In this document: in pieces, positions 48,617 to 64,000 of the stretch | How the letters are laid out: every line of letters starts with the position of its first letter | How positions within the stretch are numbered: the first letter of the stretch is position 1 | Source of the DNA: Octopus sinensis | Taxonomy: Eukaryota | Length of the DNA stretch: 64,000 nt | Assembly (NCBI RefSeq): GCF_006345805.1 | Contig: NC_043005.1 | Location: 41,974,001 to 42,038,000 of the forward strand | Direction: 5' to 3' | The notes under the pieces: generated by a model | Seen by the model: only the letters and a program-made list of their open reading frames with translations | Told to the model about the DNA's origin: nothing | The model's database searches: none | Position numbers and translations under genes: made by a program

Positions 48617-49014
48617 ACTCTTTACTCTTTTACTTGTTTCAGTCATTTGACTGCGGCCATGCTGGAGCACCGCCTTTAATCAAGCAACTCGACCCCAGGA
48701 TTTATTCTTTTGTAAGCCCAGTACTTATTCTATCGGTCTCTTTTGCCGAACCGCTAAGTAACGGGGACATAAACACACCAGCATCGGTTGTTACGCAATG
48801 CTAAGGGGACAAACACAGACACTCAAACACACACACGCATTACATATATACGACGGGTTTCTTTCATTTTCCGTCTACCAATTCCACTCACAAGGCTTTG
48901 GTCGGCCCGAGGCTATAGTAGAAGATACTTGCCCAAGGTGCCACGCAGTGGGACTGAACCCGGAACCATGTGGTTGGTAAACAAGCTACTTACCACACAG
49001 CCACTCCTACGCCT
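48617..49014 (-). mobile_element. SINE family C, full length
   Basis: Reverse complement of 3335-3750 at high identity. Confidence 0.92.
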
Positions 49015-49429
49015 ATGCTTGTGTTTTTCTAATTTGTTGAAACTGTTATTGTCATGTGTCTTACAATCAAAAGCTCGTAGCCACCTTGTTATTTTAAGGA
49101 GTAACGGGTATTCGTTTGTCCTCATTAAGGTTGTAGTTGGATATTACAAAGGAACTATAGAGTTTGTAAGAACGAGAAATTTCACGGGGAGTAAAGGTTC
49201 AATCGAAAGAAAAATTTTTACTATAAATTTTGTTTCTAAAAATTCTGAGAATCCATTAAATTAAATGTGTGAATATGTTTACAACTTGCGTATCTGAATC
49301 ACATTTAAGTCTTTTGATAATCATCACTGCTAATACACAACTTTATTTCCATAGGCAGCGTTGTTTTGTAAGCTACCACAACCAATTTGTTATCAATGGG
49401 TACGGTTGAAATTTGTAAAGCACATTCTT

Positions 49430-58884: not shown

Positions 58885-58922
<38 letters not shown>

Positions 58923-58978
58923 GCATACATATATATATTTGAATATATATATATATAGAGAGATACACACATGGATAC

Positions 58979-59035
<57 letters not shown>

Positions 59036-59107
59036 CATGTATGTATGTATGCATGTGTGTATCTATCTATCTATCTATCTCTCTCTCTCTATATATATAT
59101 ATATATA

Positions 59108-62100
59108 CGCGAGAAAGGAGCAACAAGAATGGATAGGTTTTTAGTACAATCGTTTCATACAAGGACAGGCTTTATTAAAAGTTGCAAAAATTACAGCATA
59201 TAAACGTGTCCCGTACTCATCAGCTAAAATACATGTGAGTTCTCTAGACATCCTAGTGGTTGAGGCTATACTCATGAAGTAATGTAGATAATTAAGTAAC
59301 ATAAACAGATTTCCAAAGTTCATTAAAGTTCTTTAAAGATGATGTACAATCTTATCACAGAATTTAAAAAAGTTTTAATAGCATCACAGAGAAGGTGACC
59401 TAATCCATAGTGCACATATGAATTCCAGAGATATGAGGAGGATTACATACTCACAGACGACAAATTTATCCATTGTTAATCACAACGAGGTGGGTCTCAA
59501 TTCCTGCTTATTAGCATTACAGAGAGGGTGAATTAATCATTTGTATAGATGCACAATTTCCAATGGTGTAGATGTAAATTTCCAGAGAAATGAAGAGGAA
59601 TTCATATTCACAGGCGATAAATTTATCAATGGGTTGAACACAATGAGGTAGGTATCAATTCTTGTTATATGATTAGGTATTTGCCACATTAATCACATTA
59701 CTGCTATTTACAAGAGGCTGCAGCTATTTAACTTTTAAAGGCTGAAGGGCTTTCCAGAGAGGCAAAGAACAGAAAGGGAAGGGAAGAGAAGAAAAGAGAG
59801 AAAATAAAGGAGGAGGGAGCAAAAAGGGGGGGGAGGGGGACTAAAAGAGAAGAGAAAAGGAAAAAGAGAATAAGAAGAAGAAAAAAAGAAAAAGAGAAAA
59901 GAGAAAGAAATAGGGAAAGAAGGGAAAAAAAAGAAAAGAAAAAAAAGAGGGTTCTAGTTATACAGAAGAATTAGTAGACGCAAGTCTGGTTTTAATTTAC
60001 AGGCATCTAGGAACTAGAGGAGAATATTATTCTTTGACCAATAAAACAGCTAATTTATTGCTGTTGAAATCAGCTATGAATTTAAAGAGAATCTAAAGAG
60101 ATAACACGGTCAGGGGTTTAGGGGTCAGAGGCTAAAATCAAAAGAAAATACATTAGGAAAATCTAAGTATAATCTTATCAAAAAGTCATTAAAATTTATT
60201 ATTTAATTTATTCATTTTATTGTCTTAAGGAGTTGCCGTTATTATTCATACATTGACGGACTACAGTCAAATCTTAGAAGATCATTACAAGGTGTTAGGG
60301 AGTTGTCTATCATAATGAAGATAATCATATTATCACCGAGGGAGTAGCCTTATTTATTTAATTTTGAAATAGAATTATGGGGCTTTAGTAACTCATTTTA
60401 TTTTATTAAAGGTATGCTACTTAAATTAGATTAAGTTAAGAATTAAAATTAAAAATTACAATTAAGATTTAAAATTAAGATTTAAAATTATGAGTTTGAA
60501 ATTAAATAAAGCCTCAATTAAGCAGCGTATAAGTACTATTCATTTCCCTGTTCTCAAAAAACTGATGCAGATATAAGGAAAAAGATAACTGTAGTGTGAG
60601 AACTAGCCAGGAAGATAGAAATAAAAATAATAATATCAGCTATGAAACCAATAGCAATATAATAATACTACCAAACAATAAAACAGCAATAGTAACTATC
60701 AAAACATAGGTGAAATTAGTAACCACAGAATGACTAATAACATTAACATAATAGTAATAATAACAATGCCGATTTAATAGAAGTAATAATGTTAATAATA
60801 GAAAAATAGAAATAAGGCTTTTTCCTTATATCTGCATCAGTTTTTTGAGACAGGGAAATGAATAGTACTTATACGCTGCTTATTGAGGCTTTATTTAATT
60901 TAAAACTCAATTTTAAATCTTAATTTTAAATCTTAATTTATTTTAATTTTAATTCTTAACTTAATCTAATTTAAGTAGCATACCTTTAATAAAATAAAAT
61001 GAGTTACTAAAGCCCCATAATTCTATTTCAAAATTAATAAATAAGGCTACTCCCTCGGTGATAATATGATTTCTTCATTATGATAGACAACTCCCTAACA
61101 CCTTGTAAATGATCTTATATTTTTTGACCTGTAGTCCGTCAATGTATGAATAATAACGGCAACTCCTAAGACAATAAAATGAATAAATTAAATAAATAAA
61201 TTTTATGACTTTTTGATAAGATTATTTAGATTTTCCTAATGTATGTTCTTTTGATTTTAGCCTCTGACCCTAAACCCCTGACCGTGTTATCTCTTAGATT
61301 CTCTTTAAATTCATAGCTGATTTCAACAGCAATAAATTAGCTGTTTTATTGGTCAAAGAATAATATTCTCCTCTAGTTCCTAGATGCCTGTAAATTAAAA
61401 CCAGACTTGCCGTCTACTAATTCTTCTGTATAACTAGAACCCTCTTTTTTTCTTTTTCTTTTTTTTTCCCTTCTTTCCTATTCTTTCTCTTTTCTCTTTT
61501 TTCTTTTTCTTCTTCTTATTCTCTTTTTCCTTTCTCTTCTCTTTTAGTCCCCCTCCCCCCTTTTTTGCCTCCCTCCTCCTATTTTCTCTCTTTTCTTCTC
61601 TTCCCTTCCCTTTTCTGTTCTTTGCCTCTCTGGAAAGCCCTTCAGCCTTAAAAGTAAATAGCTGCAGCCTCTTGTAAATAGCAGTAATGTTGATTAATGT
61701 GGCAAATACCTAATCATATAACAAGAATTGATACCTACCTCATTGTGTTCACCATTGATAAATTATCGCCTGTGAATATGAATTCCTCTTCATTTCTCTG
61801 GAAATTTACATCTACACCATTGGAAATATGATCTATACAAATGATTAATTCACCCTCTCTGTAATGCTATAAGCAGGAATTGAGACCACTCGTGTTGTGA
61901 TTAACAATGGATAAATTTGTCGTCTGTGAGTATGTAATCCCTCCTCATATCTCTGGAAATTCATATGTGCATATGGATTAGGTCACCTTCTCTGTGATGC
62001 TATTAAAACTTTTTTAAAATTCTGTGATACGACTGTACATGATCTTTAAAGAACTTTAATGAACTTTGGAAATCGTATGTTACTTAATTATCTACATTAC

Positions 62101-62266
62101 TTATGAGTATAGCCTCAACCACTGGAGTCTAGAGAACTCACATGTATTTAGCTGATGAGTAGGGACACGTTTATATGCTGTAATTTTTGCAACTTTTAAT
62201 AAAGCCTGTCCTTGTATGAAACGATTGTACTAAAAACCTATCCATTCTTGTTGCTTCTTTCTCGCT
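59108..62266. repeat. 3.16-kb inverted duplication: arms 59108-60585 and 60818-62266, 232-bp spacer
   Basis: The arms align end to end as reverse complements (GCGAGAAAG.AGCAACAAGAATGG ... GCAGATATAAGGAAAAAG); TA dinucleotide on both outer flanks. Confidence 0.95.
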
Positions 62267-62385
62267 TATAATCACCCCACAGTACTGTATTGTTAAAACA
62301 GTATAGTTTTTTTTGGTGCATTAAGTTAGGTACATATTCAAGTAAATTCATTTAATTTAACTTGAATCTTTATTGATTTTTGTAT

Positions 62386-62420
<35 letters not shown>

Positions 62421-63376: not shown

Positions 63377-63607
63377 ACTCTTTTCACTCTTTTACTTGTT
63401 TCAGTCACTTTAAAGCACCGCCTTTAGTCGAGCAAATCGACCCCAGGACTTATTCATTGTAAGCCTGGTACTTATTCTATCGGTTTCTTTTGCCGAACCG
63501 CCAAGTTGGGGGCGTAAATACACCAGCATCGGTTGTCAAGTAATGTTGGGGGAAAACACAGACACACAAACACACACAACACACACACACACACACACAC
63601 ACACCAC

Positions 63608-63640
<33 letters not shown>

Positions 63641-63813
63641 TACATATATACATATATACGACGAGCTTCTTTCAATTCGGGCTTCACTCACAATGCTCTG
63701 GTCGACCCGAGGCTATAGTAGAAGACACTTGCCTAAGGTCCCACGCAGTGGGAGTGAACCCGGAACCATGTGGTTTGTAAGCAAGCTACTTACCACACAG
63801 CCGCTCCTACGCC

Positions 63814-63814
<1 letters not shown>
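63377..63814 (-). mobile_element. SINE family C with expanded internal (CA)/(TA) tract and internal deletions
   Basis: Reverse complement of the 3335-3750 head and tail. Confidence 0.88.
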
Positions 63815-63872
<58 letters not shown>

Positions 63873-64000
63873 TGACCAACGATAAAGGGCTAATATTGGT
63901 AAAATGAGACATACTTGTCGACATGGCCGAAACAGCTGTAAGATGTAATTTATACTTATATTTATATTTACTTATATTTATATTCTATTTTATATATATT

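What the first reader, a model, noticed from the sequence alone, without database searches (positions are those of the whole stretch)
59108..62266. 3.16-kb palindrome with about 1.47-kb arms: a giant fold-back element or a poorly polished true hairpin
Seen: the two arms are reverse complements over their whole length around a 232-bp A-rich spacer. The outer ~100 bp differ at only about two positions. Further in, differences are mostly 1-nt indels in both arms (e.g. CCCGTACTC vs CCCTACTC, CTAAAATAC vs CTAAATAC), and the right arm is about 29 nt shorter. Inference: indel-dominated divergence looks like long-read consensus error, so the real arms may be nearly identical. Unrelated unique sequence resumes on both sides, which argues against a simple fold-back read chimera. 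The ends read TA-C-GCGAGAAAG and TA-A-GCGAGAAAG; if each lost one base they would be TA-CAGCGAG, like Tc1/mariner termini with a TA TSD (speculative). The sequence resembles none of the other repeats here. If transcribed, it would form about 1.4 kb of dsRNA.
Basis: partly seen in the sequence, partly recalled or inferred. Interest (0 to 1): 0.72.

Follow-up and report, generated by a model that had tools for sequence, protein, structure and literature searches.

The report
Head-to-head Penelope-like retrotransposon pair
The 3.2-kb palindrome is real, but it is two truncated copies of a Penelope-like retrotransposon inserted head-to-head in a (TA)n microsatellite, which is the usual way this abundant octopus repeat family inserts.

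Summary
The palindrome exists as described: arms 59108-60584 and 60818-62266, a 233-bp spacer, and 1424 matches with 15 substitutions and 47 indel events. It is not a fold-back or Tc1/mariner-type DNA transposon. [quoted passage not shown] The ORF carries the diagnostic motifs of the 'Hydra' clade of Penelope-like elements (RWK, DKT, CxCX5C) and the element inserts into (TA)n. The outer ends of the palindrome are the 3' ends of two 5'-truncated copies. They are joined 5'-to-5' through 4 nt of microhomology, and the longer right copy also lacks 811 bp. The insertion extends past the reported end: a conserved 116-bp tail (62267-62382) follows the right arm before (TA)n resumes. The genome holds well over 40 near-identical arms, from 1764 first-look candidates. 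About two thirds of sampled copies with a visible 5' end are such head-to-head pairs, as published for Penelope-like elements. The arms share seven private variants, so they are sisters. The indel excess is concentrated in the right arm and looks like consensus noise. Ordinary; low interest.

The parts
58887..59107 (.). (TA)n-rich microsatellite: the left half of the target site, directly abutting the element end
   Evidence: TRF row 58887-59107. The same (TA)n|CGCGAGAAAG junction occurs at 16 sampled ends without a tail.
59108..60604 (-). Left copy: the 3'-terminal ~1.5 kb (all 3'UTR; element coordinates C1-C1497, counted from the 3' end) of the Penelope-like element. Its sense strand is the window's minus strand. 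It is 5'-truncated and has no tail.
   Evidence: 97-98% identical over its full length to at least 40 genomic copies. Orientation follows from the ORFs in L031 and L033. Piecewise map.
59139..59229 (-). Hammerhead-ribozyme-like motif of the left copy: UUUUAG-CUGAUGA-long helix II-GAAA-C-GAUU-G-UA|CUAAAA, with the predicted cleavage site 36 nt from the element's 3' end
   Evidence: Pattern search: 1 hit in the window and 0 in 200 random 64-kb sequences. Present in 40 instances across loci. Helix II appears in the centroid fold. Rfam does not report it.
60601..60604 (.). 5'-to-5' (head-to-head) junction of the two copies, with 4-nt microhomology AACT
   Evidence: Comparison of base-level sequences with intact copies. 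The junction is unique to this locus among scored copies.
60605..60817 (+). The 'spacer': the 5'-most retained part of the right copy (about C2520-C2297, a fragment of the Asn-rich linker coding region between RT and nuclease)
   Evidence: 95-96% identical to at least 40 copies, where it lies about 800 bp upstream of the arm.
60817..60818 (.). Internal deletion junction in the right copy: 811 bp missing (the nuclease-coding part and the start of the 3'UTR), with 2-nt microhomology CT
   Evidence: Unique to this locus among scored copies.
60818..62266 (+). Right copy, 3'UTR part (C1477-C1), sense on the + strand. It carries 26 deletions relative to the family consensus. Its hammerhead-like motif (62146-62235) is broken by two of them.
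62267..62382 (+). The 'tail': the first ~116 nt of the element's 5'UTR (as seen in tandem units) appended after the 3' end of the right copy only
   Evidence: Alignment of tails, 18 tailed ends, and continuity with the 5'UTR and ATG in tandem copies.
62383..62412 (.). (TA)n resumes: the right half of the target microsatellite
   Evidence: Sequence read; alignment.

Best explanation
The palindrome is one insertion (59108-62382) of a Hydra-clade Penelope-like retrotransposon (PLE) into a (TA)n microsatellite. It consists of two 5'-truncated copies lying head-to-head, so both 3' ends face outward. Shown: the arms are the element's 3'UTR. [quoted passage not shown] Head-to-head pairs with variable breakpoints are the commonest arrangement in this family. 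The two arms share private variants. The join has 4-nt microhomology. Exactly one end carries the tail. Inferred mechanism: the nuclease cuts both strands of the self-complementary (TA)n target. Each exposed 3'-OH then primes reverse transcription at the 3' end of element RNA from a single source, which is target-primed reverse transcription from both sides. The two antisense cDNAs grow toward each other. Their 3' ends anneal through microhomology (AACT) and are filled in, giving a 5'-to-5' junction. A local hairpin at C1478-1508 may have acted as a pause site. One cDNA stopped inside it, and the other jumped from its base, which would account for the 811-bp deletion with CT microhomology; alternatively that deletion arose later at the base of the palindrome's loop. 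Most of the 1-nt indels between the arms are assembly consensus noise. The true arm divergence is about 1% or less.
For: Family and copy number: (at least 40 full-length hits per probe at 95-98%; 1764, 344 and 483 first-look candidates). A larger palindrome of the same family with arms of at least 2.8 kb at 98.8% identity. ORFs on the outward-reading strand. Motifs RWK, DKT, CxCX5C, GIY...YIG, CxxC-E and N-CxH: matching the Hydra-clade description (PMC8557442 section 11). RT fold: AlphaFold2 pLDDT above 90 over residues 20-385 and Foldseek top hits TERT (3du5_A, E 1.7e-9); the profile aligns RT motifs A and C to a retron RT. Nuclease fold: top hits I-TevI, T4 EndoII, Hpy188I and UvrC-N; Pfam GIY-YIG E 0.0012. 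(TA)n flanks and the tail. Tail equals the 5'UTR start in tandem units. Architecture tally of about 20 head-to-head, about 7 simple truncations and about 3 tandems, with one-sided tails in 5 of 5 pairs. Sister arms with 7 shared private states. Junctions unique to the locus. Microhomologies and the hairpin. Literature on inverted 5'-truncated copies, the one-sided tail, the microsatellite bias, microhomology deletions and Asn-rich inserts in PLEs: PMC8557442 and PMC3846280.
Against: Pfam does not recognise the RT, and recognises the nuclease only below threshold. Rfam reports no hammerhead. The unit (~4.6 kb) and the tail (~116 bp) are longer than published for Hydra elements (<3 kb) and PLE tails (30-40 bp). 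No RT phylogeny with reference PLEs was done. The two-sided priming model is inferred, not shown. It does not explain why ends without a tail carry an untemplated G (sense strand) while ends with a tail carry T. The shared private variants could also come from arm-to-arm gene conversion. The hairpin is only modestly stable (-7.6 kcal/mol on the sense RNA, z -1.3). No reads were available, so the physical existence of this particular palindrome rests on consistency with other loci.
Confidence: 0.85

Rival explanations
1. An assembly artefact: an inverted duplication created from fold-back (missed-adapter) long reads or by mis-joining, so that only one copy exists in the animal.
For: The right arm and tail carry about 28 one-base deletions relative to the family consensus, against 9 in the left arm and 0-7 in other copies. 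This suggests thin or poorly polished read support on that side. PLE tandem and inverted structures are known to trouble assemblies (PMC8557442).
Against: The spacer is element sequence in the correct orientation for the right copy and not an adapter. The two outer flanks differ: (TA)n directly on the left, and tail then (TA)n on the right. The first base follows the family's tail/no-tail rule. The join is asymmetric, with microhomology. About 20 other loci on many chromosomes show the same architecture with different breakpoints.
Confidence: 0.06
2. Two independent insertions of the same family, at different times and in opposite orientation, into the same (TA)n hotspot.
For: The family targets (TA)n. 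The right arm looks more diverged (94-95% against 97-98% to other copies).
Against: The arms share 7 non-consensus states that are absent from the 20 nearest copies. No (TA)n or other target sequence remains between the two 5' ends. About two thirds of visible 5' ends in the family are such pairs, and every pair with both ends visible has exactly one tail, which chance co-insertion does not explain. The extra divergence of the right arm consists of indels, not substitutions.
Confidence: 0.04
3. A single insertion followed by a later inverted duplication (replication fold-back or template switch), or by snap-back self-priming of one cDNA during insertion, so that the left arm is a copy of the right arm.
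For: The shared private variants. Self-priming has been proposed for PLEs (PMC3846280).
Against: A copy of the right arm should carry its A first base and run into the tail. Instead the left end has the C first base and the direct (TA)n junction typical of independent tail-less initiations.
Confidence: 0.04
4. A fold-back or long-TIR DNA transposon (Tc1/mariner-like) with a TA target-site duplication.
For: Long terminal inverted repeats, and TA next to both ends.
Against: No transposase. The arms are the 3'UTR of an RT-GIY-YIG ORF. Copies with a single arm are common, inner breakpoints vary, the TA belongs to long (TA)n tracts, and one end carries a 116-bp tail.
Confidence: 0.01

Closest known systems
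Hydra clade of Penelope-like elements (Craig, Yushenova, Rodriguez & Arkhipova 2021, PMC8557442)
   Same: A single ORF with RT followed by a C-terminal GIY-YIG nuclease. RWK motif, DKG changed to DKT, CxCX5C linker, CxxC and CxH around the conserved E and N. Insertion into (TA)n. Hammerhead-type motif near the repeat end. Occurrence in Mollusca.
   Different: The unit is ~4.6 kb rather than <3 kb, because of a ~1.6-kb 3'UTR and an Asn-rich linker between RT and nuclease. The hammerhead-like motif has an unusually long helix II and is not picked up by Rfam. Phylogenetic placement was not tested here.
Inverted pseudo-LTR / inverted 5'-truncated copy structures of Penelope and other EN+ PLEs (Arkhipova et al. 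2013, PMC3846280; Evgen'ev & Arkhipova 2005, as cited there)
   Same: Head-to-head inverted copies flanking or forming the insertion. An optional tail at one end only. Microhomology-mediated internal deletions. Asn-rich inserts. Preference for simple AT-rich targets.
   Different: Here both members are truncated copies with no full-length ORF between them. The shorter one is unusually long (1.5 kb), which gives a near-perfect 3.2-kb palindrome. The tail is ~116 bp rather than 30-40 bp.
L1 'twin priming' inversions (Ostertag & Kazazian 2001; from my own knowledge, not retrieved here)
   Same: Both 3'-OH ends of a staggered target break prime reverse transcription, and the two cDNAs are joined through microhomology.
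   Different: In L1 the second primer anneals internally on the same RNA, giving an inversion of adjacent segments and not a palindrome. Here both cDNAs start at the RNA 3' end.
Foldback (FB) elements and long-TIR DNA transposons
   Same: Long inverted terminal repeats that could form a hairpin.
   Different: No transposase, no fixed TIR length and no defined target-site duplication. The arms are retroelement 3' ends.

Membership tests
Penelope-like elements (EN+) | Reverse transcriptase of the PLE/TERT-related type | tested here: met
   AlphaFold2 model with pLDDT above 90 over residues 20-385. Foldseek top hits are TERTs (3du5_A E 1.7e-9), followed by other RTs. RT motifs A and C align to a retron RT. 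Pfam RVT models do not hit. No phylogeny was done.
Penelope-like elements (EN+) | GIY-YIG endonuclease fused to the RT | tested here: met
   Invariant Y34, Y47, G49, R57, H61, E116 and N131 across 22 homologues. Model pLDDT 86, with best structural matches I-TevI (probability 0.92), T4 EndoII, Hpy188I and UvrC-N (E-values weak, 0.09-1.3). Pfam GIY-YIG E 0.0012, below the gathering score.
Penelope-like elements (EN+) | Frequent 5' truncation with tandem (pseudo-LTR) and inverted head-to-head arrangements | tested here: met
   About 20 head-to-head pairs, about 7 simple truncations and about 3 tandems among sampled loci. Tandem ORFs also occur in homologue contig L044.
Penelope-like elements (EN+) | Short extension ('tail') present at only one end of the insertion | tested here: met
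   A tail at exactly one end in 5 of 5 pairs with both ends visible. It is 116-118 bp here, against the published 30-40 bp.
Penelope-like elements (EN+) | Hammerhead ribozyme motif in the terminal repeat region | tested here: inconclusive
   The complete core and helices I-III were found by pattern: 1 hit in the window and 0 in 200 random 64-kb sequences. The same minimal type is present in both terminal repeats of homologue L045. However, Rfam gives no hit, the folding energy is not exceptional (z -0.42), there is no covariation, and there is no cleavage assay.
Hydra clade of PLEs | DKG motif modified to DKT; RWK motif present | tested here: met
   PADKTGN in the L033 ORF. RIRWK in the N-terminus read from tandem copies. 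Both are in the homologue consensus.
Hydra clade of PLEs | CxCX5C linker; CxxC and CxH flanking the conserved E and N of the nuclease | tested here: met
   VCKCRIKSKC, CQLC...E and N...CVH. C13, C15, C21, C110, C113, C140 and H142 are invariant.
Hydra clade of PLEs | Absence of the CCHH motif of other C-terminal EN+ PLEs | tested here: inconclusive
   No invariant Cys between Y47 and C110, but no alignment with reference CCHH-bearing PLE nucleases was made.
Hydra clade of PLEs | Insertion into (TA)n | tested here: met
   All sampled element/flank junctions abut (TA)n, either directly or after the tail.
Hydra clade of PLEs | Placement in the Hydra clade in an RT (+EN) phylogeny | not tested
Tc1/mariner or fold-back DNA transposon | DDE transposase (or a family whose autonomous member has one), fixed TIR termini and a TA target-site duplication | tested here: not met
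   The internal sequence encodes RT and GIY-YIG. Single-armed copies and variable inner ends are common. The flanks are long (TA)n tracts, and one end is tailed.
Fold-back chimeric-read assembly artefact | Symmetric duplication around an adapter or nothing, mirrored flanks, and no independent occurrences | tested here: not met
   The spacer is element sequence. The flanks are not mirrored. The same architecture occurs at about 20 other loci. Read-level support is not testable here.

The most novel reading that the evidence does not exclude
In this family the head-to-head pairs may be the regular product of symmetric two-sided target-primed reverse transcription on a self-complementary (TA)n target. 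Two RNA copies might be held together by the quasi-palindromic helix III (CGAUUG) of a dimeric hammerhead near the 3' end. The window copy would then be a fossil intermediate showing a pause and jump of the RT at a local hairpin. The one-tail-per-pair rule and the untemplated G at tail-less ends would report an asymmetric initiation step that has not been described for Penelope-like elements.
Probability: 0.15. Interest if true: 0.55.

Novelty: new member of a known kind. Interest (0 to 1): 0.2.

Why it matters
For genome annotation, the feature should be masked as a Penelope-like (Hydra-clade) insertion and not reported as a new fold-back element. Its right boundary moves to 62382. For assembly quality control, it flags a locally under-polished stretch of a long-read assembly.

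For transposon biology, the family is a large, young and well-sampled set of head-to-head insertions (1764 first-look candidates, copies 1-3% apart). Their junctions, one-sided tails and terminal-base rule could be mined to test models of the still unresolved PLE integration mechanism. If transcribed, the ~1.45-kb inverted arms would form a long hairpin RNA that could feed small-RNA silencing of the family. That possibility is untested.

Tried and rejected
- Rfam scans of the whole unit and of homologue contigs gave no hammerhead, only sub-threshold miRNA-like hits on TA repeats and small palindromes. I rejected those as chance. A minimal hammerhead that is obvious by eye in L045 was also missed, so Rfam appears insensitive to this HHR type.
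- Pfam scans of the RT ORF and of five homologues gave nothing. The precomputed PF26215 (HTH_animal) hits were weak and uninformative.
- The supplement of Craig et al. was not held, so I could not check whether this octopus family is already listed.
- I considered that the tail marks the longer copy of each pair. L018 and others carry it on the shorter copy, so I rejected that.
- I considered that the C/A (sense G/T) terminal base marks two lineages. The two window arms share private variants, so I rejected that as a simple explanation.
- I considered internal priming on the UAUAA at the unit boundary as the origin of tail-less ends. It predicts A, not the observed C, at the first base.
- I deliberately did not join the reference pieces into a full-length element or build a full-length consensus. 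Mapping was done piecewise.
Full report
**Observation.** The inverted repeat is real. The ungapped scan finds collinear complementary blocks across 59104-62270. A gapped alignment of the left half against the reverse complement of the right half gives 1424 matches, 15 substitutions and 47 indel events. Of those indels, 34 are bases missing from the right arm and 13 are missing from the left. The arms are 59108-60584 and 60818-62266, and the spacer is 233 bp. The base composition mirrors itself around the centre.

**The arm is a high-copy repeat.** Searching the window's own 2.72-Gb genome with one arm returns 1764 first-look candidates. All 40 scored best places are full length at 95-98% identity, on many chromosomes. 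The spacer is repeated as well, but in other copies it lies about 800 bp from the arm. The window's left arm is 97-98% identical to other copies. The right arm is only 94-95% identical to anything, including the left arm.

**What the repeat is.**
- A second locus (L031, C9:65.29 Mb) is a still larger palindrome of the same family, with arms of at least 2.8 kb at 98.8% identity. Its arms carry ORFs that read from the centre outward.
- A sense-oriented copy (L033) gives a 512-aa frame with PADKTGN, FDINSYY and GLYRDDAL. This is followed by an Asn-rich linker, then VCKCRIKSKC, VIYKCT...YFYIGCT, CQLC...E and N...CVH.
- In tandem copies the ORF starts MEKVNIEF...RIRWK.
- Seventy homologues of about 700 aa were found, including proteins annotated from Octopus sinensis, which identifies the host. 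Their consensus carries RWK, DKT, CxCX5C, GIY-YIG, CxxC and CxH.
- These are the features that Craig et al. 2021 list for the 'Hydra' clade of Penelope-like elements, which also inserts into (TA)n and occurs in molluscs (PMC8557442).
- Pfam is nearly blind to the family, so I tested the folds directly. The RT model (pLDDT above 90 over residues 20-385) matches telomerase catalytic subunits best, then other RTs. The nuclease model (pLDDT 86) matches I-TevI, T4 EndoII, Hpy188I and UvrC-N, all of them GIY-YIG enzymes, though with weak E-values. A profile search also aligns RT motifs A and C to a retron RT.
- The unit is about 4.6 kb: 5'UTR ~172 nt, ORF ~950 codons and 3'UTR ~1.59 kb.

**Anatomy of the window copy.** Element coordinates are counted from the 3' end (C1). 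On the + strand the window reads as follows:
- (TA)n
- C1 to C1497, antisense (59108-60604)
- C2520 to C2297, sense (to 60817)
- an 811-bp gap
- C1477 to C1, sense (60818-62266)
- a 116-bp tail (62267-62382)
- (TA)n

The outer ends of the palindrome are therefore the 3' ends of two 5'-truncated copies joined head-to-head. The 'spacer' is simply the extra 5' sequence of the longer right copy. Neither copy has coding capacity beyond a fragment of the linker. The 5'-to-5' join has 4 nt of microhomology (AACT), and the deletion junction has 2 nt (CT). Both junctions are unique to this locus among scored copies. Both arm-side breakpoints, which lie 20 nt apart, fall in or at the base of a local hairpin, AGATAACT-17 nt-AGTTATCT. 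Its stability is -7.6 kcal/mol as sense RNA and -11.4 on the complementary strand.

**Ends, target and tail.**
- Most copies abut (TA)n directly as (TA)n|CGCGAGAAAG.
- Other ends, including the window's right end, are followed by a conserved 116-118-bp sequence, after which (TA)n resumes.
- In tandem copies this tail is continuous with the 5'UTR and start codon of the next unit. It stops at an ATATAT motif.
- Ends with a tail read ...CTCGC-T (18 cases). Ends without a tail read ...CTCGC-G-(TA)n (16 cases). There are three exceptions.

**How typical is the palindrome?** I mapped about 40 sampled loci piecewise onto element coordinates. About 20 are head-to-head pairs with different breakpoints, about 7 are simple 5' truncations and about 3 are head-to-tail tandems. 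In all five pairs where both ends are visible, exactly one end carries the tail. This matches published descriptions of PLE insertions: inverted 5'-truncated copies forming inverted repeats, a tail at one end only, microsatellite targets, microhomology deletions and Asn-rich inserts (PMC8557442; PMC3846280). Octopus genomes are already reported to contain recently active Penelope-like families (PMC13282606).

**Sister arms and consensus noise.** The comparison below is against the consensus of the 20 nearest copies.
- The two window arms share 7 non-consensus states, none of which is seen in any of those copies. They therefore come from one template or event, or have been homogenised by gene conversion.
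- Other copies show 3-33 substitutions and 0-7 deletions each.
- The right arm shows 26 deletions, 11 of them outside homopolymers. The left arm shows 9, all in homopolymers. The tail adds two more deletions.
- Substitution divergence between the arms is at most about 1% (15 in 1439 aligned bases, several of them alignment artefacts next to indels).

Why the noise is concentrated in one arm cannot be settled without reads.

**Hammerhead.** Rfam finds none. The sense strand 36-125 nt from the 3' end nevertheless contains a complete hammerhead core: helix I (UUUUAG/CUAAAA), CUGAUGA, a long helix II, GAAA, a 1-bp helix III with the quasi-palindromic CGAUUG, and the cleavage triplet GUA. The pattern occurs once in the window and never in 200 random 64-kb sequences. 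A homologous element from a metagenome carries the same minimal type, with a palindromic AAAUUU loop, in both terminal repeats, and Rfam misses that one too. Folding energy is unremarkable, and copies are too similar to show covariation. I therefore treat the motif as a strong candidate only. In the window's right arm it is disrupted by two of the 1-nt deletions.

**Mechanism.**
- Shown: the class of the element, the orientation, the junctions and the family-wide architecture.
- Inferred: two-sided target-primed reverse transcription on a self-complementary (TA)n target, microhomology joining of the two cDNA 3' ends, and pausing or jumping at the hairpin.
- Alternatives: an assembly artefact, two independent insertions, and post-insertional or snap-back duplication. 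None of these is favoured, for the reasons given under the rival explanations, but only reads and orthologous sites can exclude them.
- Unexplained: the untemplated G at tail-less ends and the one-tail-per-pair rule (note).

**Verdict.** This is a real but ordinary feature: a new, well-characterised member of a known kind of element, showing the inverted arrangement typical of that kind. Interest is low for the scan. It has modest value as a data set for PLE integration mechanics and as a marker of local assembly quality.

Noticed in passing
window 48773-49264 (+) and 63414-63875 (+); also L031 93-347: A recurring short repeat whose translation reads ...SARGYSRR(Y/H)LPKVPRSG(T/S)EPGTMW...KLLTTQP.... 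It is flanked by (CA)n/(TA)n microsatellites and looks like a tRNA-derived SINE common in this genome. It occurs next to PLE target microsatellites.
   Followed up: no
G000 loci L036 (minus strand 3-2591) and others (L012, L003, L019): Some genomic copies keep very long open frames (863 codons up to the locus end in L036; intact nuclease frames in several). Copies are only 1-3% diverged, so the family was active recently and may still be.
   Followed up: partly
window 59400-59660 (mirrored at 61720-61990): The 3'UTR contains an internal direct duplication of about 100-160 bp at 77-80% identity (element positions ~300-400 versus 456-561). At 59740-59950 there is a ~210-bp purine-rich low-complexity block, also reported by TRF.
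   Followed up: no
L031 4597-5232 (G000:C9:65292609-65293244): The centre of the larger palindrome shows the same logic as the window. One copy has a 213-bp in-frame deletion between short direct repeats (FKDFN/KDIFN), and the other copy's 5' end lies 20 nt from that deletion's boundary. L035 has a similar deletion in the same region.
   Followed up: partly
L044 (ENA metagenome contig, 7.4 kb) and L045 (JGI contig, 2.6 kb): Homologous Hydra-type elements from environmental assemblies. L044 holds head-to-tail tandem ORFs with ~320-bp spacers. L045 is a ~2.5-kb unit bounded by direct repeats, each with a minimal hammerhead. These contigs come from unidentified eukaryotes in metagenomes.
   Followed up: partly
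L040 282-408: A small perfect-looking hairpin at an inverted junction of two element fragments scores as plant miRNA precursors in Rfam, far below the gathering thresholds (46 versus 100 bits). This shows how PLE inverted junctions can mimic miRNA hairpins.
   Followed up: no
G000:C9:41900542-41900763: Another copy of the family (spacer region) lies about 73 kb upstream of the window on the same chromosome.
   Followed up: no
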